64,000 nucleotides of DNA, from assembly GCA_002269645.1 (NCBI GenBank), contig NIVC01000068.1:62001-126000 (forward strand), written 5' to 3'. The position numbers and the translations under genes were made by a program. Every line of letters starts with the position of its first letter. Position 1 is the first letter of the stretch. This DNA comes from Macrostomum lignano (taxonomy: Eukaryota). Below the pieces are notes generated by a model that saw only the letters and a list, made by a program, of their open reading frames with translations, searched no databases and had not been told where the DNA came from. This document shows positions 9,788 to 52,408 of this stretch, piece by piece.

Positions 9788-9830
<43 letters not shown>

Positions 9831-9970: not shown

Positions 9971-10053
<83 letters not shown>

Positions 10054-10534: not shown

Positions 10535-10980
10535 GGGGGGATTAAGAATGGGATCAGGGAAGAGAGAATTAAGAATGGGATCAGGGAAGAGAGAATTAAG
10601 AATGGGATCAGGGAAGAGAGAATTAAGAATGGGATCAGGGAAGAGAGAATTAAGAATGGGATCAGGGAAAAGAGAATTAAGAATGGGATCAGGGGGGAGG
10701 GGAATTAAGAATGAGATCAGGGAGGAGGGAATTCAGAATGGGATCAGGGAGGAGGGAATTCAGAATGGGATCAGGGGGGAGGGGAATTAAGAATGGGATC
10801 AGGGAGGAGGGAATTCAGAATGGGGTCAGGGAGGAGGGAATTCAGAATGGGATCAGGGGGGAGGGGAATTAAGAATGGGATCAGGGGGGAGGGGAATTCA
10901 GAATGGGATCAGGGAGGAGGGGAATTAAGAATGGGGTCAGGGAGGAGGGGAATTCAGAATGGGATCAGGGAGGAGGGAAT
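10535..10980. repeat. About 27-bp purine-rich minisatellite (GAATTAAGAATGGGATCAGGGAAGAGA and variants)
   Basis: Direct tandem repetition. Confidence 0.93.
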
Positions 10981-11122
10981 TATGCATGGTATTCAAAGCT
11001 GCAGCAAATGTGGGAATGAATGAATTAGCAAATTACGAAGAGCTAGGTAAAAATCAAAATTACCAGGGGGGTTAGAGACAATTTTCCTCTCTACACATCC
11101 GCAATCAGATGGTTTCTTCAGG

Positions 11123-19519: not shown

Positions 19520-21050
<1,531 letters not shown>

Positions 21051-21217
21051 GTACTCATCGCATTGCAATAATGCACTGCCACTAATTGAAAAACTAATAT
21101 AATCATGATGAATAAGAGCTCATACGTTGTGACTAGAATGCGTCATTTAAAATTTCGTCCAATTGACTCGAATGAACCGAAGCAATAAAAGCTTGGAAAT
21201 GAACTGTATTCCTTCAG

Positions 21218-26467: not shown

Positions 26468-26505
<38 letters not shown>

Positions 26506-27729
26506 AGGGCACCTCCAATCTCAGGCACTGACACGGTAACGGTGAAGAGGACTGAAGAAAGAAGAGAGAGGAGAGAGAGAAGAGAAAAGGAGATGTGAGA
26601 CAGGAGGGAAGAGAATAGGAGGAGATGAGAGAGGAGAGAAGAGAGGAAAAGGAGGTGAGAGAGGAAAGAAAAAAGAAAAAGAGGAGATAAGAGAGGAGAG
26701 AAGAGAGAAAATGAGGAGATGAGAGAGAAAAGGAGATGAGAGAGGAAAGAAAAAAGAAAAAGAGGAGAGAAGAGAGGAGAGAAGAGAGAAAAAGAGGAGA
26801 TGAGAGAGGAAAGAAAAAAGAAAAAGAGGAGAGAAGAGAGGAGAGAAGAGAGAAAAAGAGGAGATGAGAGAGGAAAGAAAAAAGAAAAAGAGGAGAGAAG
26901 AGAGGAGAGAAGAGAGAAAAAGAGGAGATGAGAGAGAAAAGGAGATGAGAGAGGAAAGAAAAAAGAAAAAGAGGAGAGAAGAGAGGAGAGAAGAGAGAAA
27001 AAGAGGAGATGAGAGAGGAAAGGAGATGAGAGAGGAAAGAAAAAAGAAAAAGAGGAGAGAAGAGAGGAGAGAAGAGAGAAAAAGAGGAGATGAGAGAGAA
27101 AAGGAGATGAGAGAGGAAAGAAAAAAGAAAAAGAGGAGAGAAGAGAGGAGAGAAGAGAGAAAAAAAAGGAGATGAGAGAGGAGATACAAAGAGACACAAA
27201 CCTGGAGCGGACCGAATGCCTTTATGAAGTTTCAAAGGACCCGAGGGCCAGCTGGTAGAGAGGCTTTGCGGGGCTCAAGTGGCACATGGGCCGGAGTCCA
27301 CCTACCCCTGCCTTAGCCATTAGGACACATAAGCACAGGCCACAGTTACTGTCAAACTAAATCACCTCACCTGTAAACTTTCAACCGATCCAACAAAATC
27401 CGACTGCACTCCAGCGCGTCTGGCATGTTAGTAAATCTTAACCGACTTAGCGACCAAAGCGCACTGTCGCCTGGCAACCGCTTGGCAACAATCAATTCCA
27501 GTGTATTAGACACGAGATTGTCATTGGGAGTCAATGCGTTCAACACTAGGCTAAGAGGGACACTCTCGGCAGTTTTAGGACTGTTGGCAAATTGCCAAAT
27601 CAGACGCTGCTGCAAACTATTCGAACTTGTTAAGCCGGCTGCGGGTAGCTGAAGTTTACAGGCCAGTCCCATAAACTGACAGTCGAATTGGAAGCTCTGC
27701 GCTTCAGTAGCGGCGGCGGATTCTGACAT
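21218..27729 (-). CDS. CERK: Ceramide kinase; exons 27729-27371, 25954-25769, 24822-24677, 23739-23436, 21926-21218 (567 aa)
   Basis: Spliced product has LLFINPTSG, CVGGDG, IGVIPSGSTD, GLLSYGYFGDI..SESLRWLGPMRYD, the CERK CxxxCxxC motif (CHRRCQLC, 21883-21860), AHLADGLADL and SAWNSDGE; all junctions GT-AG, total 1704 nt in frame. Confidence 0.92.
22010..23365. repeat. 22-bp minisatellite (TTGGGATCTGGGAAGCGTTACC) grading into a GACCTTGGGATCTGAGAAACGT variant; CERK intron 4
   Basis: Direct tandem repetition. Confidence 0.96.
23900..24650. repeat. About 21-bp minisatellite (GATCTATAGATTAGGGATCGG) with higher-order alternation; CERK intron 3
   Basis: Direct tandem repetition. Confidence 0.95.
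24950..25740. repeat. About 22-24-bp minisatellite (AAATATGGTCATAAAAGACACCCC); CERK intron 2
   Basis: Direct tandem repetition ending about 25 nt from the exon 2 donor. Confidence 0.95.
26440..27190. repeat. AG-rich low-complexity/tandem tract; CERK intron 1
   Basis: Purine-only repeats on plus strand; Leu/Ser/Phe and Arg/Glu/Lys ORFs are artefacts. Confidence 0.95.
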
Positions 27730-30063
27730 GCCGCGGTGTACAATCTGACAGGCATGCTGTGGGTTGTGAATTTCACTTAGCTCACAGTTTCTAAAACTTC
27801 AGTTTGTATTTCCACAAAGTATAAATTATGATAGACTCTAAAATGGCCAAACTTACATACATTCTCTGTACAAATCTAGTAATTAGTGCCAGTAAGCAAA
27901 TTTCAAGATTTTTAAGACTTTTTGACTTTCAATTTTTAATAATTTAATTAGCTAGGCCTCAATGCTAAGTATTTTGATTTTTATAAAGTATATTTTCTAG
28001 ATTTTATATTTTCAACAATTTTCTATATTTTAGCTTAGTTAGATGATCCCTGATTAGAATACCTACTAAATAAAAGTCAATATTAACAACAACAAGTATA
28101 TGTTTATTTATTTAATGATATCACCATCATATAATCCTATCCTTGAACTATAACAATATTGACAGTAGGCCCAATGCCCATAGATAAATTGGCCCATAGG
28201 GCATAGGTAAATAGTTTATATAAATATAATGGTATTGTCATTGTATTTAAAATCTCTTAAAATATCTACAATGAATTTTTAAATGAAAATAAATTATTGT
28301 TAAGGGGTCTAATGAGATTTCTTAAAGGCTATTTTGTACTGAAAGTTCATGTTGTTTCAACCATAACTCATCTAAAAATAAGTATTTTTTAATTAAAAAT
28401 TTTACTTGAAGAATTATTAACCATAGATAAACTAGCTCCTTAAAAGCTACTCTGCTATAAGCCAAATTGTTTGAATCTAGGTATATCAACTTTGAGTATC
28501 TATATTATATACAATATGCTGAGAAAAGCAAAATTAAAAAATGGACCTAGTCACCTAGACAATATGCACTTAACAATTGATGCTTAAGAATATAAAAAAT
28601 AACCTAGAAGATGAGAAATGATCTCTAGTGATCTTTATCTTTTATCTTTTGGTCTTGCTAAGTACTTAAGGAATGACCAAAATATATTTTTTCTATTCTT
28701 TAAAAGGATCTATATGTCTGAGGTCTCATAATAAAACTAAGCAAGATAAGATTGATAATGGTCAAAATAGACAAAGTTTAAATAGATGTTGCATTTTTTG
28801 CAAAGGAAAATAAGTAGTAAGTCAAGTTTTGTTGCCTTGAATCAAGTAGCTTGCATTGAGTTGAGTAATTTTTACATTTTTTTGTTAATATTTTGATAAA
28901 ACTTCTTATTAATTAATATTTTGTACTTTTAAACTTGAAAAAAACTATTGTATTTTGTTTATTTTTTGCTGCTATCTTGTGTTATAATAATAAATAATGC
29001 TTGCTATTATTTTAATAATTTTTTAATATGCTAAAGCTTGTTTTAATAGCAATCAATGAATAATGATATCATGAAAAGAAAAAAAAATATTGCTCAATGA
29101 CATTAAATCATTATTTATAGCCTATTTTATAGTGTGTTATAGTTGTGTTTTATAAGTCTTTTGGCTTAGTATTAGGCTCTTAGTGACCAGCCATTGCTTG
29201 GAAATCAAATTGAATTGATATTTTTTATTTATATTTCAATAATCTAGCAATAGGCAATAGCCAATATTTAATAACAATAGGCTCCGCTCTATATCTTTCT
29301 AACATACTATAGGCCTAGTAAAAATAGGCCTTATCATCCATTATATTTAACTTTTTATTTCACATATTGCATGAAAGTATTTTTATCCTTATTTCTGTTG
29401 AGTATTGTGTATAGGCTACTGTATATTTCTTTCTTTTTAATTGCTTTTAGCTCTAGTCTAAGTCTAAAGTATTTTAGCAAAAAACCTATCCTTCTATTCG
29501 AATTTGTCTGTTGCATGCATTTTAGCACTTCACTTCACTTAGACAGTTGAAGGCGACAGGTAAAACAAGCATAAATAGGCACACTAGGCAGAACTACTTT
29601 TACTTCCTCAACACAACGCCCTCAATGAAGTCACAGCTTACAATTACAAATATTGTCTGCCTCTACTAAGTAAGCACTTAAAAAATATAGTACAGCTACT
29701 AATTGTGTGAGTAATTTAATAACTCAAGACTAATTCCGTGATTCGAATACTCAAAATACAAAACTGAATTTATTTCAACAGTATAAAACTGTAGCTTAAT
29801 TTACTATTGTAAAATTCAAAGACCTTGCCCTCCTATTGCCGATGCATATTTCTTAGAAAAACTCGTGTTTAAAGTTTTGCAAATTTGTTTAACATGTGTA
29901 GCATGGGAGATATTCGAGATATTATGTACATTATTATTATTATAAAATAAAAATTTGCAAAATAGCTTATGACAAAATTCCTTGATTAAGAATTGTTGAA
30001 TAAAATATATATTGTTGAAATATATTGTTGAAAGTACGTAATTTGCATTGCTAAGTACCATTA

Positions 30064-32097: not shown

Positions 32098-34503
32098 CTC
32101 ATGCTATTGCTCTCTTCTCGAAATTTCTCATGCGACACCCACCCTTCCTCCGCTCCTATTGTTCTCGTTTTTTATTCTTTTGTTCTCTTTTCGCTCCTAA
32201 TTATCAAATTTTCCCAGATTTTCTCGTTCTATTGTTTCTTCTTTCGCACCCAAGTAGCACCTTTTTCTCAATGTTTACTTTTCTATTGTTCTCGGTTCTC
32301 CCCAATTATCCCCGATTTCCATTTCTTTTGTTCTCGGTCCGGATCCCATTGTTCTCAATGTTTGCTTGCGCAACACTTTTCCGGCGCCCCACTGTGCTTA
32401 TTTTCCACCCACCCCTCCTCCGGATTGCGCAATCCTCCCATTTCTCATGTCACCATGCCGTTCTCATGCTTCTCATCATGACTCATTCTGACGTCATCTT
32501 CCCAGCAGCCAATCAGAGAGAGGGAGTCATGGAAACGACCTTGGAGCGGCGGCCGTGGGGACTATTTAAGGAAGCGATTTTCGGCGTGAGAACCTCAGAT
32601 CTTTTCTGTTTTTCGCGGGTTTCTCCCGTTCGGACCTTAAGTCTTCCAGTCCTACTATTGGACTTACTTCGTCTATAAGGCGAACCTCTGCCGGCCCGCG
32701 GTCTGATACCGCCAAGTTTCCTCAGCTCCCCTAGCGAGCTCATCTGCCGGCCCACGGTCTTTTACCACCCAGCATCCTCAGCATCACCTGAGCTACATCA
32801 GCGCATCGCCGCTTCATTGTCTGCCTGTCCGCAGTCCACAGCCGCCGTCGGTCACTCCATCGCTCTCTCTCTCTCTCTGTGCAGCTGCCGGTGAGTTCCT
32901 GTACTAATTTGTGCTTTAATTGCCTTTGCTTATCCGGGGTTTGCTTTTTTTCCATTGCTTGATTAGAGAACTGGGCCAATTGTGTACCGTACTTTGCTGT
33001 ACGAGCTATTTTACTCAATAGTGAAGCCGCATAACTGCCTGTTGATTTCGCCTAAGGGCCTAATTATTAACCATAACTAAACTCCTCATTTTTAACATCT
33101 TCACTATCATTTCACTCATGGCTTGTTGAGCCTTTCTCCCTGGGTGGCAAAGCATAAGGAAGCTGGGGTAAGCTAATGGCCTCTCCCCGTGCAAAGCCCG
33201 CCTGTGTGTGCGTGCTGCGGGTCCGTGTGTGCGTGCAGTAGAGGGGATTAGCGTGTCTCGGCACAGAATGGCAGCAGGAAGGTTGCAACGTCCTGCTTAC
33301 GCGTCCCTTCGCCCTGAGCAATCTAAACTATAGCTAGTACATGTTCATCTCGCACTACTCTTAGTAATTGGAGCCGCAAGTCCGCCTCGCTCACAGCCAC
33401 AAAGGATCCCCTGCTGAGAAATCCTCCAGATTGAGTCCAGAGTTCCCGAATATGCCCCAAGCAGAGTCCCTGTACTCGGCTGCATGTGTCTCCCCTGTTA
33501 GCCTAAATCCCCTGGTAACCAATCCAGGCGGGGCTCTAGCTTTGAAAGGTCTGGTAGTAAGATCCAGGTGCGCCAGGTCACATTGAGTGTTGGGCGGTGG
33601 CAGCTATTCGGTCATACCATGACCGAGTGACCAATTATTGCACCTTGGCTACAGGTGGGGTCCATGTGGGTCCTTGGCCCTCTGGTCATGAAAGCGCTAC
33701 CAAAGCTATCAATCATGTGAGCGGGACAGTCTGGTGCTGGAGGTCCGTCAGGTCATTGCCCGGTCATAGGCAGCCTACGGTCACTGCCCCCTCTGGTCAT
33801 GCGTTCGCTTCCCCGCGGAGCGGACGGTCATCAAGGGGTGTTACATCAAATTAATAATTAAATCTAATCTGTTAAATCTATTAAATCTAAATCTAATTAT
33901 CAATTAGATTTCAAGTTAATATAATAAGCTACAATACTTCTTCCTTCTTTATACCTACTTTAGTAGTATTTTACATACAAGTATTTACTTATTATTTGTT
34001 ACTTTCTTACTCGTAAATGGCTTGGATGACCTCTCTGTGTCAGCTGAAAAGATGTACAGTATAAGCAAAGACAGTAGTGTATTATAAAGTCTGTTTTGAA
34101 AAAGTGCCAGTCAGTCAACTCAACGAAATTAAGAGTTAATAAGTTCAGATCTTTTTGTTTTAACACTATCGCATTTTTCCATTAGCAAAAGCCATTACAG
34201 TGCCCAGCAAAACAAAATTACTGTTTCAACCGTCATCTTGTGACGACTAAAGAACGAAGTTCTAATAGTTAATTCACTAAATTATTGTCAAGCCCGAGCA
34301 AATTCATTACATGTGGGTATACTCGTACATGTATATCCTCTCAACAGAATTGTTATGTTTATGGCAAATTTGTAAACTTATTGTCAAATCGACCATCAAT
34401 CGCAATACACATACATGTAAATTTATGTGCTGTGACTAGAAAAGTTCGGTAAAACACTCAGCACTCAAAGCAGCTTACCGGAATTAGAGAATTTGATCGC
34501 CAC

Positions 34504-36621
34504 ATGGAGACAATGCCAGCAGCTTTTCTGTACTTAGTAACGACGTATTTTGCCCAGCAACTATGTGTCGCCGTACCACAGCCAGAGTTTCAAAGAGACA
34601 GCAACCGAACCAGCAACTTTCTGGCGAGCGACGAAGTGTGGGTGCCCGGAACTACTACCCTGGTTACTATGCGAATGGTTGGAGAGCCGCTGGACATTGC
34701 AGTTCGATTGCTCAATGGTCCCGCTTCGTTTGGACAGCCTAAACTCTACCTAATGGTGAAATGTTCGCAGTCGGACAGTTTCGTTACAGCGGAGCTGTTT
34801 ACCGGATTTACTGAGCCCATTTCTGCTACGGGTGAGAATAACAACAAACTGGGGCGCGTGTTCTGTAAGCACAGGCAGCCATTCTCTGTTCAGCCAGTAC
34901 AAAGTCGGAGCAACCAGTTCAGGCTGAAGCTGATTGACAACGCCGGGAGAGTTCCGTTTGAGGAATCGCTCGACTTGTCAGCAGAGATAGCTGTACGGGC
35001 CGCGTACAACAGACTCGAGCTGACTTCGAGTAGTCTACTCATCTACAACTGGGACTCTCTACTCAGCTTTAAAGTCCAGCCCGCCCAGCATCCTGGTGCT
35101 GCATCGCAATCTGTGGACCGCGTGCTCTCAGAGGAGGGCAAATCTTATCTGTTTTCTCTCTTTTATGAAGTCCAGCAACCTTTTTTGCAAAAGGTGAATT
35201 TCTTAAAGCAAAGTTTCATTAAATTAGTGAATAACGCGTCTCTTGTAATGCGCAGGCATTTGACAGTCTCGATAATAGTTCGCTTTGACGAAAAATCCTG
35301 CTCAGAGCCAGTAGAGACCAGCTCGGCAATCGTTATTTCATCTGGCGATCCAACATTGAGAAATGAATCCTATTACAAGCGATCTGACTTCTTCCAGCCT
35401 TGTTGTGTCTTAAATTTGCAAACAGGTGCTTTAGAAGTAAACGAAGTACTTCTTGGTAATTTATTCTGGCAAGTGATTAGAAGACGGAAAAGTATTTATT
35501 CAGCCGTATTTTTCTGCCTTGCGATATCTTCAAGCAATAAAGCGATGCGATATCATTCATCTTTAACCCTCAAAAAGGCATCAACTATTATTCGTCCCGA
35601 GTTGATTAACGAATATCGCAACGATTCTGGCTCTGAAAACGGGAAAACTAAGCAGACCCCCGCTCGTGTTTATCCAAGCCAGAGATTCGAAAATGAGTAT
35701 ACTTCTGTCTACCCAAGCTGGTTTATAGGGACGGCAGAAAAATATTTCAAAATTTCAAGTGCTCTCGATGATGTTCGGCGGCAAAAATGTAGAAATAGCG
35801 CGGATAGCATGGAAGTGCAGCTCATTTCTGGAATGATTGACGTCCTCATAAAAACGCCAATCACGTGCTTCAAAAGTAGCAAGGCCTATCGCGTGTTCCA
35901 CAATGGCACGGTGTGCGCTGGTCAGGTGGGAGGCGACGGCTTTCGAAACTGCAGTCAGTACTCAGTTAGCAAGTTTTACTCAGCTATCCGGTTTGATGGC
36001 ATGCTTAGCACTAAACATGCTGGAGTTTACACATTCGCTACAGAGGACACAGTGTTCAAGTTCATAGTGACAGTGAAAAGCCTACCTTTGTTCCGCACCG
36101 ATGCTCAGTCTGGAGATCTCCAAGCGGAATCGATGGTCACCGAGCTGGTCCAGCTGTTTAACCTGAGCTGCACTGCGTTTTACTCCGGCGTGTCACCTGT
36201 CAGTCTGAGGCCGTCATTTTTAGTTAAGGCTGCCGGAAAGCTGCTGGAGTTGTCTGTCCACGAGTTCACTCAGTACTTGGGTACGGCTCCTCAGAAGCTA
36301 GAGGTGAAACGTAGCGACGACAACAACAGCAGCAGCAGGCTGCAGCTGTACATGCCTTACGTGGAGAAGCCAAGAGCAGAGGCCATTTCCTTTGTAGTCC
36401 GTTGCCGGGCCTCACTAACGGCTGCAGTTACAAAAGAGCTTCTTGGCACGTCAGTGGAGTACTCAACTGAAACTCGTGGCATTGTCCGCTTTACGCATTC
36501 TGATGAAGATTGGACTTTTCGGAACTTATTGGCAAAACTCTTCTCGCCGAGACTTTGCTGCGACGCTGTGCTACTCACAACAGCTCTGTTACTAGCTACT
36601 GTTGCCAAGTACTTAAATTGA
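34504..36621 (+). CDS. Uncharacterised predicted surface protein, paralog A (705 aa): signal peptide, Cys-containing ectodomain, hydrophobic C-terminus (possible GPI signal)
   Basis: Long intact intronless ORF; N-terminal AAFLYLVTTYFAQQLCVA; C-terminal AVLLTTALLLATVAKYLN; many NxS/T sequons; paralogous to 41052-43094. Confidence 0.8.
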   Translation: METMPAAFLYLVTTYFAQQLCVAVPQPEFQRDSNRTSNFLASDEVWVPGTTTLVTMRMVGEPLDIAVRLLNGPASFGQPKLYLMVKCSQSDSFVTAELFTGFTEPISATGENNNKLGRVFCKHRQPFSVQPVQSRSNQFRLKLIDNAGRVPFEESLDLSAEIAVRAAYNRLELTSSSLLIYNWDSLLSFKVQPAQHPGAASQSVDRVLSEEGKSYLFSLFYEVQQPFLQKVNFLKQSFIKLVNNASLVMRRHLTVSIIVRFDEKSCSEPVETSSAIVISSGDPTLRNESYYKRSDFFQPCCVLNLQTGALEVNEVLLGNLFWQVIRRRKSIYSAVFFCLAISSSNKAMRYHSSLTLKKASTIIRPELINEYRNDSGSENGKTKQTPARVYPSQRFENEYTSVYPSWFIGTAEKYFKISSALDDVRRQKCRNSADSMEVQLISGMIDVLIKTPITCFKSSKAYRVFHNGTVCAGQVGGDGFRNCSQYSVSKFYSAIRFDGMLSTKHAGVYTFATEDTVFKFIVTVKSLPLFRTDAQSGDLQAESMVTELVQLFNLSCTAFYSGVSPVSLRPSFLVKAAGKLLELSVHEFTQYLGTAPQKLEVKRSDDNNSSSRLQLYMPYVEKPRAEAISFVVRCRASLTAAVTKELLGTSVEYSTETRGIVRFTHSDEDWTFRNLLAKLFSPRLCCDAVLLTTALLLATVAKYLN

Positions 36622-37478
36622 ACGATTGCCCTCGTTAAACTAGGGTGGAAACTTCACATAGTAAATAATGGCACTACTCGATGCATTCAAAACATATAAG
36701 ATTTAAATGGTAGGGTTGGATTGGGTGGTAGGATTGTAACATTGTTACAGATGAGATATTGCATTTCGCTACCCATTTTGATTTAATTTGCTTTACTTTT
36801 TAGGTCCTGCATGATTTTAAAGGTAGATTACTTGTAGCTAACTTTATATATACTTTGGTGTCGATTGCTGGTATTCGCGTGCATTTATGAAAGCTTCATC
36901 ATTTTTATTGGCTCCTCTTGTTTTTGGATAAGAATATCGGAAACTATATGTGAATTAAATAATCTTATGGCTGTTTTGATATTTGACCTGCGCTACGTAA
37001 TAATTAAACAAAAATTATTAAACCATTTATAGCATTTTTTTGTCTTTCCAACGTCTTCAGATCTTCACGGACTCGAAAATAGCAAATCTGCTATTTGAAG
37101 ATTAGAGAAGTTATATAAAGAACTGCTAAATCAGGCTCTTTCGAGATCGAGCTGTAGTGTTTAAAACTACATTAGATAAATATCATTGCAGGTAAAACGA
37201 ACTAATTAGTTTGTATTCTTGTAAATTCCTTGATTCAAAAAATAAAGAATCGAAAATATTCGATAGACAAATACAGATTGACGGTTTGGACAACTGAAGT
37301 GAAAGTCTTTCAATTTTTAGCACTAAAATACCCTCGCCTGGATCTACTCACTCACAGGTTTATTAAACAATTTTTACGAAATGCTATCGGACAACAGCAA
37401 GTAAGCAAAGTTTCAGGCTGAATTTCAGCTGATCCTGTCTTTTAATTGTATTTTTTAGTTTAATTAAACACTATCAGA

Positions 37479-37632
37479 GGAGTTCTAGCCTAGTGGTTAG
37501 GTTAGAGCGTCGGACTCACGACTGGAAGGTTGGGGGTTCGATTCTCGACCCACTCAGGACAATGTGTGTCCTTGAGCAAGACACTTAACTCTGCATTGCT
37601 TCAATTCACGCGCTGTAAAATGAGTGCCAGCA
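37479..37632 (+). mobile_element. tRNA-derived SINE with CORE-like central domain
   Basis: A-box TAGCCTAGTGG, B-box GGTTCGATTC, followed by TGTGTCCTTGAGCAAGACACTTAAC..CTGTAAAATG resembling the CORE-SINE consensus; 3' boundary uncertain. Confidence 0.7.
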
Positions 37633-38211
37633 TTCCGCTCACCTTCACCCAGTTCCGCCAACTTGACTAGGTTAAGTGCAACAAGCCTTCTCCATCGCTA
37701 GACAATATCATCCTGCCACAGGTCAGAAGGAACGTGCTCGATCAAAGTCAGTGTGAAGTCAACGAGTCATCTCATCAAGCAAGCAAGAAGACCAAGTTTC
37801 AACGTGTTACGCTCGTATAACATCATCGAAACCGGAAGCCCAACGTAATGTACATGGGCAGCCCTGCATAAAAGCAGATGCTCAAACACAAGTGACACCG
37901 AAGGACCTGGACGGTGGGCGATCAGTGGCCTCTGGAACCACGGACCCCGAAGGGGGAGTCACTCGACTCCCACAAAGGGAATGGCCAGGGGGCGACTGTG
38001 CGCCTGCACGTGCAACAACGTCTTCCTGGCCAACGCTCCAGACGCACCGCACCGCCTGTTCGTCTGGCGCAATCCCAACGGGGCGTCCCTGGAAACAGAT
38101 GATTGACTACAAATGCTAATTAACTAAATGACACTATTTGAAAATTCACATTTTACTATCAATTATTATACTGATTAATGGCCACACTTAATTTCCTATC
38201 CCCTATCAATA

Positions 38212-38613
38212 TTGGTTTTGTCAGCCTAACTGAGAATAAAGCCACCCAAAATGAGAATCCTGCTTACGCTGACTGCGAACGGCCTGGCTGCGTGCAGCCT
38301 TGGTCTATGGGCCATAGACAATAAAGGACAAGCAAAGTGATAAAAAGCCATCCAATGTGAGAATCGATTGGTCTATGCGTCGTATTCTTTTATTTTTATA
38401 CCTTCTGAGCCATACATGTATGACTAGCCAATAGCTTGAACGGAATAACGGAAACAGGAACACACTGGATGATACAGTACAGTAAAGTAAAGAGTTAAAA
38501 TAGCCGTCCCTCAATGCACTGCCCAAAGAGTCATTAGCTAGGCCCTTCGTATTCAGCGTAGGCAGGATTCTCACTTTGGATGGCTTTATTCTCAGTTAGG
38601 CTGACAAAACCAA
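38212..38613. mobile_element. MITE, 402 bp, about 60-bp terminal inverted repeats, TA flanks (Tc1/mariner-like)
   Basis: TA|TTGGTTTTGTCAGCCTAACTGAGAATAAAGCC... and ...GGCTTTATTCTCAGTTAGGCTGACAAAACCAA|TA. Confidence 0.88.
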
Positions 38614-40064
38614 TACTATTTTATACTATTTCATTTCAGACCCAGGAGAATAATCCTCGTTGCACAAGGATTTCAAAAAAGGGGGAATAATATAGGGATT
38701 AGAAATTAGGAAAAGTCTGAGAAAGTAAAAAGATTCGCTAAAGGGCAAAGTAAGAAGCAAAAATCAGGGGGCGAAAGTTCAATTTAGAGATAAGACACTT
38801 GAGTAAAAGTAATTAAAAGAACGGTGCAAGAAAGCGAAATAAATCATAGATTGATAAGAACTTAACTGTCACTTTCACCCAAGATTTCAGACCAAACGAG
38901 ATAACTTCAAAGTCGGCCGAGGTACCAGACAGAGTCAGTCGGCGCGGTGCCAGGAGAATCGATACGGCAAGATACCCCGACTGGCGGGCGAGATACAGCG
39001 ATGGTCAACAGGCCAAGGTCAGCGGTGATGTACGTGGATCAGCCCAGGGAGCGAAAGCACGACTCACCGAGGGACGCACGGGTGGTCTGACGTGCGAATC
39101 GACTCGAATAATGAGCCCTGAACTGACCTTTAACCATCGTCTGATGCGACCAACTAACAGATATTAAATTACCTCTCTCGCCCCGTAGCAACGTGCTAAT
39201 CTAATGTTGCTGCGTCTGTTGCTAATCAGCAGCGGGGATGACGTGTATCTAAAAATCAATAAAATAGACACGGCCTCGGCCCCGAATGGGCGCTCTAAAA
39301 AGACCTTAAGTGATAGAACTCCTGTGCAGTTCATTCAGACCCAGCGACTTATATTTGTCCTTTTTGTAGCCAAAGGCACAATTTGTAGCCAACCGGTAGA
39401 CGATCTCGGTTGTAAAATCTTTTAGGCTTAGGAATTAGTTAGAACGGAAGCACATAAGAGACCAACTTGGGTAAAAGTCAGTAAGGCCTAAAAGAAGACT
39501 TACAGTTAGGTCAATTCTTTTTTTTCTTCACTTGTCATTTGTCAAATTATTATAATTTTTACAATTTGTTACAATACAGAACAGCCACATTCAAAACCAC
39601 ACGGTCACTTCCACTGCATCATGTCATCAATTTAAGTTCAAGGGGAAACGTCGGAAGAGAAGTTCCGGGGGGAAACGACCGTAAGCCGGGGCATTCCCAG
39701 ATCAAGTGCTCCGCATTCTCAACACCAGAGAGGTGTTAAATCGGATGACTTCTCAGAACAAAAGAATAAGGAAAAAAGTCGGATTCTTCAAAGTATTTTC
39801 TTGCCTTCAGCACTTCCGCGGTCTCGCGCAGGAACACAAAACTTATAAAAAACTTACCAAAGAACTTATCAAAAAATTACTATTTAACGTGGGGTTGGGT
39901 TAGCAGAGAGAGAGGGGGGTTAGCTCATTAAATGAACATTAAATGAAGAAAAAAATGCATGTACAGTTAAATATGTAAACCCCCAACAATATAGCAAAAA
40001 TGAACCTTCAGAACAAGAGGCAGAATGGGCATTACTCACTGAGGATTTTTTCTTGGAGGTGACG

Positions 40065-40690
40065 ATTCCCTGGAGTTGGCAAAACAGCCATGTCCCGAGA
40101 GAGCCATGGTCACCGCCCTGATGTCCCTGCGGTTGAGTCCAAGCAGGGGCCCTGCAGAGCCCGGGAGAAGGACAGGGGACAGCCACGCTGGATTGCCGGC
40201 AGTCGGGGGTGTTAACCTACCTCAGCTCCGTGTGCTTAGATGCCACCCAACTGGTTGATCCGAGTGGTGACAATGGCGGGGGGGTGGGGGCCACTGGCAG
40301 GGGACCAGTAAAAGAACCGGTCAAGCCAGCCTTGGCCAGGCGATTGGCCAATTCGTTGCCAGGGTGGACCCCAGTGCCCAGGGATCCACCTTAGGGACAC
40401 CTTGTTGGAGACGCCTAAGCTGTTAAGCTGCCCGATGCAGTCGAGGACTGTACGCGAGCAGGTGGTGTTGCGCTCAAGGGCGTGGATCGCCGCTTGACTG
40501 TCTGAGTGAAGAATAATCTCCTTCCCCCAGACGTGCATGGCACAGGAGCTGATGGCGAGAACTTCGTTCTGGAAGATGGTTGATCAGGTGCCGGTGTGCT
40601 GGGAGAAGGTCCCCACTGTTCACACTCTAGACACAATGCAGGAGCCGGAGCCAGAGGCGGAGTTGATTTGTGCCCCACAAAATTCTAATT
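40065..40690 (-). mobile_element. I-group non-LTR retrotransposon fragment, RNase H domain, frameshifted
   Basis: IILHSDSQAAIHAL, LRWIPGH, then (shifted) GNELANRLAK; downstream RRDIRAVTMALSGHGCF. Confidence 0.82.
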
Positions 40691-41051
40691 TTTTTACAAC
40701 TGTATTTGTCACAGATCAACTTGGTCCTATTTTATGGAGATACTACGATGGAATTTTTACTGCGAATTCAACCAGCTAAAAAAATTCATTTTAAACCGAA
40801 GAAGTACAAGTACTATTATATGAAGTAGCTAGGTCTGTAGCTCGTGAGAGGTCTTCGGATGATGCAAACGTTAGATTCGTCCCTCAAAGGGCCATAGACA
40901 TTTCAATACGGGCTGTATGGCTCAAAGTTAAATAGCTAATCGAAAGTGACTTACTTTGATACCTAGATCGTGAAAATTTAATTTAATTTAAAAGAACCCA
41001 AGTGTAACGAGTCGGACTTAGCCATACCTTACGGACAAAATCCCAATTTCA

Positions 41052-43094
41052 TTGAGATTAACAATGCTAGCAGCCTTTCAAAGCGTGATTGCAGCGTGCA
41101 TTGTCGGCCAAATACTCGGTGTAGGATCCATTTACCCTACGGAACACAGGCAACAGCCAGAGTTTCAAAGAGACAGCAACCGAACCAGCAACTTTCTGGC
41201 GAGCGACGAAGTGTGGGTGCCCGGAACTACTACCCTGGTTACTATGCGAATGGTTGGAGAGCCGCTGGACATTGCAGTTCGATTGCTCAATGGTCCCGCT
41301 TCGTTTGGACAGCCTAAACTCTACCTAATGGTGAAATGTTCGCAGTCGGACAGTTTCGTTACAGCGGAGCTGTTTACCGGATTTACTGAGCCCATTTCTG
41401 CTACGGGTGAGAATAACAACAAACTGGGGCGCGTGTTCTGTAAGCACAGGCAGCCATTCTCTGTTCAGCCAGTACAAAGTCGGAGCAACCAGTTCAGGCT
41501 GAAGCTGATTGACAACGCCGGGAGAGTTCCGTTTGAGGAATCGCTCGACTTGTCAGCAGAGATAGCTGTACGGGCCGCGTACAACAGACTCGAGCTGACT
41601 TCGAGTAGTCTACTCATCTACAACTGGGACTCTCTACTCAGCTTTGATGATGAGGCTGACGACCAGAGTTTTTCCGGAGGGTCAGCTCCAAAGAACCAAC
41701 ACCAAATACTTTCCAAGGAAGCCATTGATTATTTATCGTTTCATTTTGACTACCTGCATGGTTCAAAATTCAAGAAAGTTCCATTTTTGCACGACAGGTT
41801 TGCTAAAATGGTGCAAAAATCTTCTCTAGTAGTGCGCAGCAGCTTAGTTTTCTCGGTAATTGTTCGCTATAACAGCAGCTCCTGCTGGGATGTTTGGGCA
41901 CCAAGATCCGATATCGTTGTTTCATCCGGCGATCCGGATTTCGGCAGCAACTCGACTTACATTCAGTCAAATTTGAAACCGTGCTACTACTTGGATTTGC
42001 GAACTGGAGTTTTGGAGGTCAACGGACACTGCATGAACGGCCGAGTGGACAAGGCTGCCAGACTAATCAAGAACGACACGCAAGTTGTGTTGACTTGCTA
42101 CCGGATATCTGCAAGTAACAAGGCCTGGCGTTATAACGCATTGAAGCCAGTCAAAGTCAATTACATGGATTTAAGATCTTTTCTTGTTGACATTAGAAGC
42201 GGTTTATTTTTGGAAGTTTTTAATAATTTTGAAAGCTACAAACGATTCGTAAAAAAATGCCATACCAGCTTCGATAAAATTGAAGTACAGCTATTTTCTG
42301 GAATGATCGACGTCATTTTACAAGTGCCAGTCGTGTGTTCCATAATCCAACGCGTGTTCCACAATGGCACGGTGTGCGCTGGTCAGGTGGGAGGCGACGG
42401 CTTTCGAAACTGCAGTCAGTACTCAGTTAGCAAGTTTTACTCAGCTATCCGGTTTGATGGCATGCTTAGCACTAAACATGCTGGAGTTTACACATTCGCT
42501 ACAGAGGACACAGTGTTCAAGTTCATAGTGACAGTGATAAGCCTACCTTTGTTCCGCACCGATGCTCAGTCTGGAGATCTCCAAGCGGAATCGATGGTCA
42601 CCGAGCTCGTCCAGCTGTTTAACCTGAGCTGCACTGCGTTTTACTCCAGCGTGTCACCTGTCAGTCTGAGGCCGTCATTTTTAGTCAATGTTGACTTTAA
42701 TCTGGTAAAGATGGCTGTCCACGAGTTCACTCAGTACTTGGGTACGGCTCCTCAGAAGCTAGAGGTGAAACGTAGCGACGACAACAACAGCAGCAGCAGG
42801 CTGCAGCTGTACATGCCTTACGTGGAGAACCCTGGCGACAAGGCCAATGCGTTTGTAGTCCGTTGCCGGGCCTCACTAACGGCTGCAGTTACAAAAAAGC
42901 TTCTTGGCACGTCAGTGGAGTACTCAACTGAAACTCGTGGCATTGTCCGCTTCACGAATCAGGTTCGAAATTTTCGAAACTACATGATGAGCAAAGACGT
43001 CTCGTCGGCAGTGCATATCGACATTGCGCTGCTTACTACATCAATGTGCTTTTCTATTGTCGTTAGTAGCCTGACTGTAATCGATATGGGATAA
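41052..43094 (+). CDS. Uncharacterised predicted surface protein, paralog B (680 aa; start may be the ATG at 41064)
   Basis: Long intact intronless ORF; hydrophobic N-terminus MLAAFQSVIAACIVGQILGVG; hydrophobic C-terminus IALLTTSMCFSIVVSSL; shares four near-identical blocks with paralog A. Confidence 0.8.
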   Translation: MRLTMLAAFQSVIAACIVGQILGVGSIYPTEHRQQPEFQRDSNRTSNFLASDEVWVPGTTTLVTMRMVGEPLDIAVRLLNGPASFGQPKLYLMVKCSQSDSFVTAELFTGFTEPISATGENNNKLGRVFCKHRQPFSVQPVQSRSNQFRLKLIDNAGRVPFEESLDLSAEIAVRAAYNRLELTSSSLLIYNWDSLLSFDDEADDQSFSGGSAPKNQHQILSKEAIDYLSFHFDYLHGSKFKKVPFLHDRFAKMVQKSSLVVRSSLVFSVIVRYNSSSCWDVWAPRSDIVVSSGDPDFGSNSTYIQSNLKPCYYLDLRTGVLEVNGHCMNGRVDKAARLIKNDTQVVLTCYRISASNKAWRYNALKPVKVNYMDLRSFLVDIRSGLFLEVFNNFESYKRFVKKCHTSFDKIEVQLFSGMIDVILQVPVVCSIIQRVFHNGTVCAGQVGGDGFRNCSQYSVSKFYSAIRFDGMLSTKHAGVYTFATEDTVFKFIVTVISLPLFRTDAQSGDLQAESMVTELVQLFNLSCTAFYSSVSPVSLRPSFLVNVDFNLVKMAVHEFTQYLGTAPQKLEVKRSDDNNSSSRLQLYMPYVENPGDKANAFVVRCRASLTAAVTKKLLGTSVEYSTETRGIVRFTNQVRNFRNYMMSKDVSSAVHIDIALLTTSMCFSIVVSSLTVIDMG

Positions 43095-49440: not shown

Positions 49441-50680
49441 AATAATAATAATAATATAATAATATCACGCCCGCGCCGACCACACAAGTGACCAAAAAAG
49501 GGTTGCGTCAAATCGCGCGCTTCAGGACAAGGTCTCTGACGTGCTTCACGCCGGCTGACTGGCTGGGGGCTCGCGCATCATCGATAAGACGGTCGATGCT
49601 CTTCCCTATCCGCGCCTGCGGGTCCCTGCGGAGTCCTGCAGTGGCTCTAGGCAGTAGGCTTCGGCCCCTATGATATGCCCGGCAAGCCGCAGACGTCGCT
49701 TGCTAAGCAGGACAGAAGGCCGCATCAGGAAGTCTGTCGTCTTGCTGCCGGGGCCGCGGCGGGCGCTGAAGCGGCACGAACCAGCTGCCTCTCGAACGCC
49801 TCGGTCAGCGTCTAGGTTTCAGCATTGTACAGGAGGGCGGTCTCGAAAACAGCCTGGAACAGCTGGGACCTGGCGCTGTCCGACAGGGCCTCCGAGAGCA
49901 GCACCGCCCGAACAGATCGGAAGGCGGCCGAAGCCTTGCCGCGCCGTCTCGCCAGGTCGTCACTCACGCCCGGCAGCAGCCCGCCGAGGTAAAGGAACTG
50001 ACGACACTTCGGAAGCACCGTCACAGGGCCATCGCCGTCTCTGAGTCGAATCTCGGCGGGTGGATCGTGAGGCACCGTCAGCACCTCGGTCTTTTTGGCG
50101 TTGATGACTAGGCCGACCCTCGCAGCTCCGCAGTCAGGCCATCCAGCAGCCGTTGGGCGCCTTCTTCTCCGGGTGTCGCTGACTGGAGCGCCTTTGCAGT
50201 AGAAAGCTGTCCTCTGCGGTCGGCAGGCCGGTCCTGAGCACCCAGTCCGTCAGCAAAACAAAGAGGAAAGGCGCCAGAGTGTCACCCTGCAGCACTCCGG
50301 AGGTCGTGCTGAACAGGACCGACGGTCCGTCTGGCGTCGCTACCGCAACGGTGGTGTCCTGGTACAGCGCCATGATGGCGGAGATCAGTTGCTGCTGTAC
50401 GTTGTAGGCACGGAGCACGCGAGGCAGCTCACCGTGGGCCACCGAGTCGAAAGCCTTGAAGAAGTCAACAAAGATGACAACTAGGCTTGACTGGTGGATG
50501 TGCGCTTCCTCGATGATGCAGCGGAGGGCCAGGATCTGCGTCACTGTGCCACGACGGGGCCGGAACCCGTTCTGCTCGTACCGCAGGTATGGGTCCAGCA
50601 CAGGCTGTAACCATGCTAACAGCACCCGGTTGAACAGCTTCGCAGCACAGGACATCAGCGAAATCCCGCGATGCTTCATT
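49441..50680 (-). mobile_element. 5'-truncated RTE-type LINE (RT + C-terminal region) with (TAT)n tail
   Basis: HRGISLMSCAAKLFN, EQNGFRPRRGT, FVDFFKAFDSV, GVLQGDTLAPFLF, deletion across the YADD region, FLYLGG, LLYNAET; tail AATAATAAT on plus strand at 49441-49465. Confidence 0.9.
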
Positions 50681-52408
50681 CACAGCTCTTCTGTATAAGT
50701 ACAGAGACGGAGTACGGAGAGTGAGACATCGTGAGAGGCTACTTAAAAGCTTCTTCTTTACCGTAGCTGTCATGGCCGTGGGCGCACCCATTCATGCAAC
50801 AGCTTCCGCCACCACTGCCCGTCTTCGCTGCTCTCCTTAGCCTCTCCATTTTCCATCCGGTCCATTCTGAGGTCATCCTCTCACTGCATTTTCGGCCTTC
50901 CTTTTCTTTTTTCGCCTTCTAGTTGTCCTTGCAGTCTGATGTCTGCATGATGATCTCCTCCACAGATTCTGGTTCCTTTCCCAAAACCTCCCTAGCTTTT
51001 CTCTATAAGAGTTAGAAATCTGAAGTTTTGACCCTAAGTTAGAAAATAGGTAGAAATTAATGAAATGCCCAGGCGCAGTGAAGGGCGAGGCAGAAGAGCA
51101 CAATGGAACCCCTAGATAGCTATTAGAAGGGCAAACAGAAGCAGCTTTAAGATAATTAATCAACTGTCAAGTCAATTTGAATAGCCGAATCTAATAAAGC
51201 CCCTTTCCATTCCAGTCAGTAGCGACACCCCACCGCAGGAACAATGGCGACTAAACCGGCCGGGAAAAGCAAACTGAGCAGCGGCCTGACCTAGAGAACA
51301 ACGCGGCACGCGGCACCTTCTGGCGCACCCTGAGGGAGAAAACGTGAGGCCCACCTACAGACTCCTATTCAACCCGAAGCGGCCCAAGAAGGCGAGATCA
51401 ACCCCAAGCTGCCTGACAACCGAGAGAAACAGAGGACTGTTTAATCATCAATGGACAGAGTTTAGAGACGGAAAATTAAGCTCTTTTTCTATAATCTTTC
51501 TATCCCAAATTTTATCCAACTCAACAAATAGATTTGCGAAACCCAGAGTAATCTCTAACCCTCACACTTAGCAACCTACTAGAACTAGAACTAACTTAAT
51601 TCATGTACAACTAGGGGACTGTGTCCCAGATTGTTATTGCTCAAAACCCCCGCCGTTGCTAACCACGCGAAGACACCCCACCGGCGGGCGGGGGAGGTCA
51701 AAAATGCTAATTGGTATAAATAGACGCTCATCTCAAACTGGAGCGGCTCTTCGTTTTTTGCTGCGCAGTTTTCGATCTCGAATTGCTCCCTTTGAATTAG
51801 TCTCTGGATTACCCAGTTGGCACAAATCTAAGTCTTCAATATAATTATTTGTCTTAATTGTCGCGCAGAGCAAATCTTAGAGAGACTCAATCTCAGCTTA
51901 GTAGGAGATCCCGTCAGTTTATACGGTTTTCTCTGATGGCCTGATAGGAGAGATTAAGAGCTGTAAGAACCTTAGACCGCTAGACATCTATCTTAAGAAA
52001 GTGAGAACCCAAGCTCAAAGGCCCCAGAGAAAAACGCGTATATTCTCCAAAAACAGGCATTTGTATTTTTCTCTTTCCATGAAATCTTTTATAATTCTTC
52101 TGTAATATTTCATTTCAAAGGCTTTGAGTATCTCCACACTTTTCTTCCCCCAGAGTTCAGCTTTCGGACCCATAACAGAGTTAGTGGTAGTTTTGCTGTG
52201 CATGACTGGGTGAAAAGGAAAAAATACTCGCGCAAATGAGAGAGGCTACAATTGCGGAAGTTTGAAGTCAGTCTGTTCCATAGACAAACTTGTAGCTTCA
52301 GTTAGCAACTTACTCCGAATTAGGTTTATTGGGATTTTGTGTTCCACTAGCATTTCTATGTTGATTCGCGGCGGTAGTTTTTGCTGAGAAATTTCGAGGT
52401 TGTCAACA

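What the first reader, a model, noticed from the sequence alone, without database searches (positions are those of the whole stretch)
34504..43094. Paralog pair built as a mosaic of near-identical constant blocks and deeply diverged variable cassettes
Seen: genes A and B show no nucleotide difference I could find over 493 nt (34578-35070 = 41153-41645) and are nearly identical over three more blocks (35890-36224 = 42351-42685, 3 mismatches seen; 36254-36368 = 42715-42829; 36391-36491 = 42852-42952, 1 mismatch). Between them lie a large variable region (819 versus 705 nt) that is clearly homologous but old (SLVMRRHLTVSIIVRF/SLVVRSSLVFSVIVRY, SSGDP, LNLQTGALEVN/LDLRTGVLEVN, SNKAMRY/SNKAWRY, VQLISGMIDV/VQLFSGMIDV) and two short same-length swaps (KAAGKLLELS/NVDFNLVKMA; KPRAEAIS/NPGDKANA). 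Signal peptides, C-terminal tails and flanks are unrelated. Boundaries are sharp and both frames are intact. A simple duplication cannot give this pattern. Known: segmental gene conversion diversifies surface-protein families (trypanosome VSG, Borrelia vlsE, chicken Ig, sea-urchin Sp185/333, Hydractinia Alr). Inference: an undescribed constant/variable surface-protein family shuffled or homogenised by gene conversion, possibly for self/non-self recognition, immunity or gamete interaction.
Basis: partly seen in the sequence, partly recalled or inferred. Interest (0 to 1): 0.82.

Follow-up and report, generated by a model that had tools for sequence, protein, structure and literature searches.

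The report
Flatworm surface-protein paralogs patched by gene conversion
Two neighbouring genes of the flatworm Macrostomum lignano, encoding an uncharacterised immunoglobulin-like surface glycoprotein, are old duplicates whose first and last domains are kept almost identical by gene conversion while the middle domain has drifted far apart; this is a clean but not unprecedented case of domain-restricted concerted evolution.

Summary
Genes A (34504-36621) and B (41064-43094) are identical over 493 nt. They differ at 3/335, 0/115 and 1/101 sites in three further blocks. Between and around these blocks lie a middle region saturated at synonymous sites (pS 0.73-0.77), two short diverged islands (29 and 22 nt), and diverged signal peptides and tails.

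The window is Macrostomum lignano contig NIVC01000068.1. Two further syntenic copies of the locus show the same mosaic with their own private differences, so it is not an assembly artefact.

A second tandem pair of the same family (C/D, another contig) has the same architecture, with boundaries at nearly the same alignment columns. There, the constant block groups by locus and the variable block by gene. That is direct evidence of conversion after the loci split.

GC3 is raised in the constant blocks of both pairs but is uniform in non-mosaic relatives, as expected from GC-biased conversion.

The proteins carry a signal peptide, N-glycosylation sequons and a hydrophobic C-terminus. They have no Pfam match. 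The predicted fold resembles multi-Ig adhesion molecules, and distant longer relatives have an L1CAM-type cytoplasmic tail. All relatives found are from M. lignano.

I found no cassette archive and no combinatorial shuffling. The function is unknown.

The parts
34504..36621 (+). Gene A: intronless ORF of 705 aa with a signal peptide, 9 N-X-S/T sequons, 15 Cys and a hydrophobic C-terminus
   Evidence: annotated as a protein in GenBank assembly GCA_002269645.1
41064..43094 (+). Gene B: intronless ORF of 676 aa from the ATG at 41064 (the mechanical ORF starts at TTG 41052, 680 aa); same architecture as A
34578..35070 (+). N-constant block of A (= 41153-41645 in B): 0/493 differences. Encodes the whole predicted first domain (aa 26-189). 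GC3 0.59
41153..41645 (+). N-constant block of B
35071..35889 (+). Variable block of A (819 nt): second domain plus a disordered linker. 32% aa identity to B, pS 0.73-0.77 (saturated), GC3 0.42
41646..42350 (+). Variable block of B (705 nt). GC3 0.47
35890..36491 (+). C-constant region of A (= 42351-42952 in B). Three near-identical blocks (3/335, 0/115, 1/101 differences) encode most of the two Ig-like domains. They are interrupted by island 1 (36225-36253, 13/29 differences, C-C' hairpin of the last Ig-like domain) and island 2 (36369-36390, 10/22 differences, E-F loop)
42351..42952 (+). C-constant region of B, with island 1 at 42686-42714 and island 2 at 42830-42851
36492..36621 (+). Diverged tail of A, ending in a hydrophobic segment (possible GPI signal or short membrane anchor)
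42953..43094 (+). Diverged tail of B, ending in a hydrophobic segment
36622..41051 (.). Spacer between A and B. It has no similarity to the genes and differs in length and content among the three copies of the locus (about 4.4, 4.9 and 11.5 kb)

Best explanation
A and B are old tandem duplicates of a Macrostomum-specific surface glycoprotein. It has a signal peptide, a first beta-rich domain, a fast-evolving second domain, a disordered linker, two Ig-like domains and a hydrophobic membrane-anchoring C-terminus. Non-allelic GC-biased gene conversion between the two copies keeps homogenising the DNA that encodes domain 1 and domains 3-4. The signal peptide, domain 2 with its linker, two short loops of domain 4 and the tail have escaped. 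These parts are now too mismatched to take part in heteroduplex repair, so they keep diverging. Shown: the mosaic itself, the age contrast between blocks, ongoing conversion, the GC3 signature, and the same pattern in a second pair. Inferred: domain 2 and the two loops carry paralog-specific binding specificity, and selection helped them escape. The identical domains would then serve as a common scaffold or bind a shared partner.
For: (1) Age contrast. Synonymous divergence is 0 in the N-constant block and saturated (pS 0.73-0.77) in the variable block, so purifying selection on the protein cannot explain the identity.
(2) Three syntenic copies of the locus (window, L002, L003; 2-3% apart overall) all show the mosaic. 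A-versus-B differences in the constant blocks (0-5/493, 0-3/335) are no larger than differences between orthologous copies. There are no fixed A/B differences in three of the four constant blocks, and polymorphisms are shared between paralogs at gene nt 1644 and 1684.
(3) Copy A2 in L002 carries the B-type island 1 (13 of 13 sites) and a hybrid island 2. This shows short tracts being transferred.
(4) The sister pair C/D on contig NIVC01000506.1 has the same mosaic (447 nt at 98%, 713 nt at 99.2%, middle about 45%), with boundaries at nearly the same alignment columns.
(5) In C/D the constant block groups by locus. Five sites are shared by C2 and D2 against C1 and D1. C2-D2 differ at 4/712 and C1-D1 at 6/713, against C1-C2 at 10/713 and D1-D2 at 8/712. 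The variable block groups by gene.
(6) GC3 is higher in constant than in variable blocks: A 0.59 vs 0.42, B 0.59-0.60 vs 0.47, C 0.77-0.81 vs 0.49, D 0.79-0.80 vs 0.56 (Fisher p from 0.004 to 3e-16). It is uniform in relatives F and G.
(7) Block boundaries match predicted domain boundaries.
(8) Protein nature: signal peptide, sequons and hydrophobic C-terminus. Foldseek hits are multi-Ig adhesion molecules. Distant relatives P0008 and P0009 carry the Bravo_FIGEY tail.
Against: The assembly was polished with Pilon using multi-mapping Illumina and RNA-seq reads (PMC5730564). Exact counts of single differences within near-identical blocks, including the shared polymorphisms, could be distorted. 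For the A/B pair alone, most single-site differences fit mutation after the loci split, so post-split conversion rests on A2 and two sites. The strongest phylogenetic evidence comes from the C/D pair. Selection on domain 2 is not demonstrated: dN/dS there is below 1 and unreliable because dS is saturated. A purely mechanistic mismatch barrier explains the data equally well. The AF2 model has only moderate confidence (pLDDT 61.6), there is no Ig signature at sequence level, and domain 2 has no structural match. Expression site and function are unknown.
Confidence: 0.85

Rival explanations
1. The identical blocks were created by collapse or by short-read polishing of truly diverged paralogs.
For: The assembly used Canu on PacBio reads followed by Pilon with Illumina and RNA-seq reads. 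Multi-mapped reads can erase a few real differences between near-identical blocks.
Against: The mosaic is present on three independent contigs for A/B and on two or three for C/D, each with private variants. The locus-specific variants shared by C2 and D2 cannot arise from homogenising polishing. The blocks (0.1-0.7 kb) are far shorter than long reads anchored in the unique variable regions. Polishing cannot turn sequence at about 55% identity into 100% identity.
Confidence: 0.03
2. The duplication is recent, which would explain the identical blocks. The middle, the islands, the signal peptide and the tail of one copy were then replaced by ectopic conversion from other, diverged family members (cassette import or shuffling).
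For: The boundaries are sharp. L002 carries an orphan 129-nt B-type fragment inserted 370 nt downstream of A2, which shows that short pieces can be copied to new places.
Against: No donor exists among the available sequences. The 90%-cluster search found only the A and B clusters. The exhaustive search found only relatives with 16-36% identity. This model needs five separate replacements plus replacement of both flanks. The variable regions of A and B are each other's closest relatives. The GC3 contrast indicates a long history of conversion in the constant blocks rather than in the variable ones.
Confidence: 0.05
3. A and B form one transcription unit with constant and alternative variable parts, as in Dscam or protocadherin, and splicing between them makes hybrid proteins.
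For: The GenBank models PAA73632 (709 aa) and PAA60426 (520 aa) at the two other loci join gene A to gene B inside an identical block.
Against: Both genes are complete intronless ORFs with their own start, signal peptide, stop and anchor, and they are annotated separately on the window's contig. One chimeric model is frame-shifted at the junction and truncated, as expected when a spliced aligner places a junction freely inside identical sequence. The annotation is StringTie/TACO-based.
Confidence: 0.04
4. The mosaic is maintained mainly by diversifying selection on domain 2 and the two loops, which would act as a recognition code, rather than by a passive mismatch barrier.
For: Two pairs show parallel escape of the same domain. 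Domain 2 evolves faster across the family (16-21% against 31-36% aa identity between pairs). All 5 differences in the variable block between A copies are nonsynonymous. The only copy with converted islands (A2) also has a premature stop.
Against: The counts are small (5 nonsynonymous against 0 synonymous is not significant). B copies show 3-6 nonsynonymous and 0-4 synonymous differences per pair. Long-term dN/dS is below 1. A faster-evolving, less constrained domain would escape conversion without any positive selection.
Confidence: 0.3

Closest known systems
Partial (domain- or segment-restricted) gene conversion between tandem paralogs, e.g. human gamma-globin HBG1/HBG2, red/green opsins, RHD/RHCE, MHC and KIR genes; theory by Innan and by Teshima & Innan (own knowledge, not checked here)
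   Same: Old duplicates carry tracts of near-identity that include synonymous sites. The boundaries are sharp. Polymorphisms are shared between paralogs. Converted parts group by locus and unconverted parts by gene. GC3 is raised in the converted parts.
   Different: The gene family and the organism are new. The same domain-level pattern occurs in parallel in two separate tandem pairs. Two very short unconverted islands (22-29 nt) sit inside a converted block.
L1CAM / neurofascin / contactin-type immunoglobulin-superfamily adhesion molecules
   Same: The predicted fold of A matches multi-Ig ectodomains such as contactins, DCC, Sidekick and Dscam Ig1-4 (TM-score about 0.5 normalised by target). 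The distant family members P0008 and P0009 have a transmembrane helix and a Bravo_FIGEY (PF13882) cytoplasmic domain above Pfam's cut-off. The Cys...Trp...Cys Ig signature is readable in those longer members.
   Different: A and B lack the cytoplasmic tail and the membrane-proximal region. There is no Pfam Ig or fn3 hit and no PDB sequence match. Domain 2 has no structural relative. The 6 Ig + FN3 architecture is not seen.
Cassette-based variation systems (trypanosome VSG, Borrelia vlsE, chicken Ig pseudogene conversion)
   Same: Gene conversion acts on genes for surface proteins that have constant and variable parts.
   Different: In those systems conversion diversifies the variable part from an archive of donors. 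Here conversion homogenises the constant parts, the variable parts are stable, and no archive exists.

Membership tests
Non-allelic gene conversion / concerted evolution of tandem paralogs | Tracts identical at synonymous as well as nonsynonymous sites, flanked by anciently diverged homologous sequence | tested here: met
   dS is 0 over 164 codons against pS 0.73-0.77 in the adjacent block. The identical run is 493 nt against at most 59 in 10,000 shuffles.
Non-allelic gene conversion / concerted evolution of tandem paralogs | Phylogenetic incongruence: converted blocks group by locus, unconverted blocks by gene | tested here: met
   Clear for the sister pair C/D, where 5 sites are shared by C2 and D2 against C1 and D1. 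For A/B it is partial: polymorphisms are shared at gene nt 1644 and 1684, and A2 carries the B-type island.
Non-allelic gene conversion / concerted evolution of tandem paralogs | GC enrichment at third codon positions of converted tracts (GC-biased conversion) | tested here: met
   GC3 in constant against variable blocks: A 0.59/0.42, B 0.59/0.47, C 0.79/0.49, D 0.80/0.56, with p from 0.004 to 3e-16. The relatives F and G are uniform.
Non-allelic gene conversion / concerted evolution of tandem paralogs | Conversion events seen directly (pedigrees, sperm typing, population haplotypes) | not testable with these tools
   Neither reads nor population data are available here.
Immunoglobulin superfamily, L1CAM-like adhesion molecules | Ig-fold ectodomain modules | tested here: inconclusive
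   The AF2 model (pLDDT 61.6, pTM 0.65) matches IgSF ectodomains with Foldseek E of 1e-7 to 1e-8. There is no Pfam Ig hit and no PDB sequence hit.
Immunoglobulin superfamily, L1CAM-like adhesion molecules | Transmembrane helix followed by an ankyrin-binding FIGQY-type cytoplasmic domain (Bravo_FIGEY) | tested here: not met
   A and B end in a hydrophobic segment with 3-4 residues after it. The domain is present only in the distant relatives P0008 and P0009.
Cassette-archive antigenic or receptor variation (VSG, vlsE, chicken Ig) | Many silent donor cassettes that feed variable segments into an expressed gene | tested here: not met
   tblastn and blastn of the window find only A and B. The other loci hold one orphan 129-nt fragment. 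Database searches find two variable types only. The whole genome could not be searched.
Dscam/protocadherin-type alternative variable exons | One transcription unit with arrays of alternative exons spliced to shared constant exons | tested here: not met
   There are two complete intronless ORFs, each with its own constant parts. The chimeric annotated models are probably mapping artefacts.
GPI-anchored surface proteins | N-terminal signal peptide plus a C-terminal hydrophobic signal preceded by a small-residue omega site | tested here: inconclusive
   Hydrophobic N- and C-termini are present in A to E. No dedicated predictor or experiment was available.

The most novel reading that the evidence does not exclude
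The family is a flatworm-specific cell-surface recognition system. Each tandem pair would offer two alternative specificity modules: domain 2 plus the C-C' and E-F loops of the last Ig-like domain. Selection would keep these apart while gene conversion keeps the scaffold domains interchangeable. This would be a two-allele-like 'code' built from paralogs, possibly acting in cell-cell, gamete or partner recognition in a hermaphrodite under strong sexual selection.
Probability: 0.12. Interest if true: 0.65.

Novelty: new member of a known kind. Interest (0 to 1): 0.4.

Why it matters
The locus is a compact, well-replicated natural example of how gene conversion and divergence partition a gene by protein domain. 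It offers two independent pairs, three genomic copies each, sharp boundaries, a GC3 signature, and even 22-29 nt islands that resist conversion. It also flags an uncharacterised Macrostomum-specific family that seems to derive from L1CAM-like adhesion molecules. M. lignano has transgenesis and RNAi, so the roles of the constant and variable domains could be tested directly. It does not reveal a new kind of diversity-generating mechanism.

Tried and rejected
- A Pfam scan of A and B found nothing. The PPR_1 hit at E 0.04 is noise.
- The word-indexed protein search, with one sequence and with a 7-sequence profile, returned only A and B. It did not even return the known relatives, so it is uninformative about family size.
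- A PDB sequence profile search found nothing.
- A separate AF2 model of domain 2 (pLDDT 69) has no significant PDB fold match; the best E-value is 0.66.
- I looked for expression or function of Mlig007554, Mlig012689, Mlig015344 and Mlig023923 in paper texts and in the supplements of three M. lignano papers and found nothing.
- I tested whether the tandem duplication predates the A/B versus C/D split, which would group A with C or D in the variable block. It does not: within-pair identity (32-36% aa) exceeds between-pair identity (16-21%).
- I considered the islands as compensated frameshifts and rejected this. The nucleotides differ at 13/29 sites with no offset similarity, and both versions resemble other family members.
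- I considered an envelope gene of a retroelement, given the signal peptide, glycosylation sites and C-terminal anchor. I rejected this because of the conserved synteny between ceramide kinase and UFD1 and the cellular IgSF-like relatives.
- My reading of ORF 40236-40538 as RNase H-like was not confirmed by Pfam.
Full report
**Identity of the sequence.** Gene A's product is found exactly once in the public collection. It lies on contig NIVC01000068.1 of assembly GCA_002269645.1, with window position 34504 equal to contig position 94504. Cluster members are named as Macrostomum lignano hypothetical proteins BOX15_Mlig007554g1 and g2. The window is therefore nuclear DNA of this free-living flatworm. 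It is rich in simple repeats and retroelement debris. The locus lies between a ceramide-kinase gene and a UFD1 gene.

**Check of the observation.** Two intronless ORFs lie 4.4 kb apart on the + strand. A is 34504-36621 (705 aa). B is 41052/41064-43094 (680 aa from a TTG, 676 aa from the annotated ATG).
- blastn of the two genes with 1 kb flanks gives 34578-35070 = 41153-41645 at 100% over 493 nt.
- It gives 35890-36495 = 42351-42956 at 95.6%, plus a 42-nt island at 83%. Nothing in the flanks matches.
- These blocks are separated by two same-length islands with 13/29 and 10/22 differences, and by a middle region of 819 against 705 nt.
- Shuffling the 1989 aligned columns 10,000 times never gave an identical run longer than 59 nt.
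- One detail needs correcting. The signal peptides and tails are alignable (TM.AAF at the start; tail 36% aa identity, dS about 0.8). The two genes are therefore homologous over their whole length, and only the DNA outside them is unrelated.

**Age of the parts.** By Nei-Gojobori counting, the N-constant block has no synonymous or nonsynonymous difference in 164 codons. The variable block has pS 0.73-0.77, which is saturated, and pN 0.42-0.44. The islands, signal peptide and tail have dS of 0.3-1.5. Identity at synonymous sites rules out protein-level constraint as the cause of the constant blocks. Saturation in the middle rules out a recent duplication followed by fast protein evolution. The genes are old duplicates, parts of which have been made identical recently.

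**Replication in other copies of the locus.**
- The DV1 assembly is known to be redundant because of duplicated chromosomes (PMC5730564).
- Two more syntenic copies were found. L002 (NIVC01001001.1) has A2 at 10001-12115 and B2 at 17023-19053. L003 (NIVC01002153.1) has A3 at 10001-12115 and B3 at 23647-25677. They are about 2-3% diverged from the window overall and have different transposon content in the spacer.
- All three show the same mosaic.
- In the constant blocks, A-versus-B differences (0-5/493, 0-3/335, 0-2/115, 1-4/101) are no larger than differences between orthologous copies.
- There is no fixed A/B difference in three of the four blocks.
- Gene positions 1644 and 1684 carry a polymorphism shared between paralogs, with A2 and B1 against the rest.
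- A2 carries the complete B-type island 1 (13 of 13 sites) and a hybrid island 2 (A-type at nt 1866-1876, B-type at 1883-1887). It also has a premature stop at codon 656.
- L002 also holds an orphan 129-nt copy of the B-type block 2 plus island 2, inserted 370 nt downstream of A2 and absent from the other copies.
- These features show that short tracts move between the paralogs. They also exclude an artefact confined to one contig.
- Caveat: the assembly was polished with Pilon using short reads and RNA-seq. Counts of isolated differences inside near-identical blocks may be slightly wrong. Multi-site features such as the A2 island are not affected.

**The family, and a second pair with the same architecture.**
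- An exhaustive HMMER search of 1.84 billion representative proteins with the A/B profile found only five other clusters, all from M. lignano.
- P0007 (C, 723 aa, one 83-nt intron) and P0011 (D, 658 aa) are tandem neighbours on contig NIVC01000506.1, about 9 kb apart.
- At DNA level they share 447 nt at 98% and 713 nt at 99.2%. Signal peptides, middle (about 45% nt identity) and tails are diverged.
- On a common alignment, the start and end of the N-constant block and the end of the C-constant block fall within a few codons of those in A/B. The start of the C-constant block lies about 40 codons earlier in C/D, where A/B have intermediate identity of 64-75%.
- Between the pairs, constant domains are 31-36% identical in protein and the variable domain 16-21%. 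Within pairs the variable domain is 32-36% identical.
- So the variable domain evolves faster throughout the family. The two pairs reached the mosaic independently, or escaped whole-gene homogenisation independently.

**Direct evidence of conversion after the loci split.** A second copy of the C/D locus (L006: C2 at 10001-12264, D2 at 16875-18847) was compared with the first.
- In the C-constant block, five sites (C1 gene nt 1562, 1613, 1616, 1712, 1724) have one state in both paralogs of one locus and another state in both paralogs of the other.
- Differences there are C2-D2 4/712 and C1-D1 6/713, against C1-C2 10/713 and D1-D2 8/712.
- In the variable block the grouping is by gene: C1-C2 9/858, D1-D2 3/583, and C against D about 255/577.
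- This incongruence is the classical signature of concerted evolution. Polishing would homogenise all copies alike, so it cannot produce this pattern.

**GC-biased conversion.**

| Gene | GC3, constant blocks | GC3, variable block | Fisher p |
|---|---|---|---|
| A | 0.59 | 0.42 | 3e-5 |
| B | 0.59-0.60 | 0.47 | 0.004 |
| C | 0.77-0.81 | 0.49 | 3e-16 |
| D | 0.79-0.80 | 0.56 | 1e-9 |
| F (L009) | 0.65 | 0.59 | n.s. |
| G (L008) | 0.88 | 0.84 | n.s. |

F and G are relatives for which no mosaic partner is known, and their GC3 is uniform across the homologous blocks. This fits a long history of GC-biased conversion restricted to the constant blocks.

**What the proteins are.**
- A and B have hydrophobic N-termini, nine N-X-S/T sequons, 14-15 cysteines and a hydrophobic C-terminal segment followed by only 3-4 residues. 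This suggests secreted, glycosylated, membrane-anchored proteins (GPI or a short anchor; not tested).
- There is no Pfam match and no PDB sequence match.
- An AlphaFold2 model built on a 12-sequence family alignment has moderate confidence (pLDDT 61.6, pTM 0.65).
- It shows a beta-rich domain 1 (about aa 26-189) and an alpha/beta domain 2 (about 200-360).
- A disordered linker (361-427) follows, and then two beta-sandwich domains (about 430-530 and 545-662).
- Foldseek against the PDB returns multi-Ig adhesion molecules: contactins, DCC, Sidekick, Dscam Ig1-4, VEGFR-2 D4-5 and RAGE. E-values go down to 4e-8 and TM-scores reach about 0.5 when normalised by target.
- Domain 2 modelled alone (pLDDT 69) has no significant match.
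- The longest relatives, P0008 and P0009 (about 900 aa), add a membrane-proximal region and a transmembrane helix. They also add a Bravo_FIGEY (PF13882) cytoplasmic domain scoring 37 and 61 bits against a cut-off of 23.8. Canonical Ig motifs such as 'SGVYRCEA' are readable in them.
- The family therefore looks like a lineage-specific offshoot of L1CAM-like adhesion molecules. A to E would be truncated, anchor-only versions.

**How the mosaic maps onto the structure.**
- The N-constant block equals domain 1 and ends exactly where the low-confidence linker begins (aa 189/190).
- The C-constant region ends with the last strand of domain 4 (aa 664).
- In C/D the C-constant region begins at the end of the disordered linker.
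- Island 1 (aa 575-584) covers the end of strand C, the turn and strand C' of the last Ig-like domain, at the position of the conserved Trp in the longer relatives.
- Island 2 (aa 622-629) is the loop before strand F.
- In Ig domains these two elements lie next to each other at one end of the GFC sheet.

**Mechanism proposed.** Shown: old tandem duplicates, with recurrent GC-biased non-allelic conversion confined to the blocks that encode domain 1 and domains 3-4 and continuing after the recent duplication of the loci. Inferred: the regions that diverge fastest (signal peptide, domain 2 and linker, two loops, tail) passed the mismatch density at which heteroduplex repair is aborted. They now act as barriers that fix sharp tract ends. 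Selection for different binding properties of domain 2 and the loops may have helped. Three things hint at this but do not demonstrate it. The same pattern arose in parallel in two pairs. All five differences among A copies in the variable block are nonsynonymous. The only copy with converted islands is also the one with a premature stop.

**Comparison with known systems.** The phenomenon belongs to the well-known class of partial gene conversion between tandem paralogs (gamma-globins, opsins, RH, MHC/KIR; cited from my own knowledge). It differs from cassette systems such as VSG or vlsE in direction and logic. Here conversion homogenises the constant parts, the variable parts are stable, and there is no donor archive. 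The A-to-B chimeric GenBank models (PAA73632, PAA60426) are most likely artefacts of spliced read mapping in identical sequence. One of them is frame-shifted at the junction.

**Verdict.** The recognition-system interpretation remains speculative. Novelty: a new member of a known kind, in an undescribed flatworm-specific family. Interest is moderate (0.4).

Noticed in passing
L002 12483-12611 (NIVC01001001.1): An orphan 129-nt copy of gene B's constant block 2 plus B-type island 2 (95-96% identical) is inserted about 370 nt downstream of A2. It is absent from the window and from L003. It looks like a footprint of templated repair.
   Followed up: partly
L002 10001-12115 (copy A2): A2 has a premature stop (GAA>TAA at codon 656), a C429Y change of a family-invariant cysteine, the B-type island 1 and a hybrid island 2. 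It is possibly a decaying copy.
   Followed up: partly
L002 10001-19056 and L003 10001-25114: The GenBank gene models PAA73632 (709 aa) and PAA60426 (520 aa, frame-shifted) join gene A to gene B across the spacer, with the junction inside an identical block. They are probably annotation artefacts. If real, they would be intergenic splicing.
   Followed up: partly
window 33614-36013 versus L002 and L003: Divergence between the locus copies drops to 0-1% across gene A and about 900 nt upstream, against 2-5% further out. The three A copies have 0 synonymous differences in 296 synonymous sites but 6 nonsynonymous ones. The B copies show about 3% synonymous divergence. This is unexplained. Possible causes are exchange between the locus copies, polishing, or selection.
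   Followed up: partly
L006 16875-18847 and L007 4913-6842: Copies D2 and D3 of the second pair carry a 1-nt frameshift and a 47-nt deletion respectively, both in the C-constant block. They are pseudogenes or residual long-read errors.
   Followed up: no
L009 12930-14839 (- strand) versus 6001-8616 (+ strand): The long, L1CAM-tailed family member F (P0015) has an inverted, 98.6-100% identical partial second copy about 4 kb downstream. Local duplication with homogenisation may therefore be general in this family.
   Followed up: no
window 38210-38289 and 38536-38615: An 80-nt inverted repeat (91% identity) lies in the spacer between A and B. It may be a small foldback or MITE-like element.
   Followed up: no
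window 2789-3444, 6906-7577, 9334-10083, 13123-13578, 19500-20350, 21962-22714, 24027-24605, 26325-27235: There are many long tandem or simple-repeat arrays with strong strand skews, for example AT skew 0.53 at 20001-22000. An AT-rich stretch (GC 0.27) lies at 28001-30000.
   Followed up: no
window 942-2678 (+), 21218-21802 (-), 50134-50679 (-), 52400-53918 (+): Neighbouring features are an NCBP3-domain protein gene, a ceramide-kinase C-terminal exon, a reverse-transcriptase fragment (RVT_1) and a UFD1-like gene. The CERK...UFD1 synteny is conserved in L002 and L003.
   Followed up: partly
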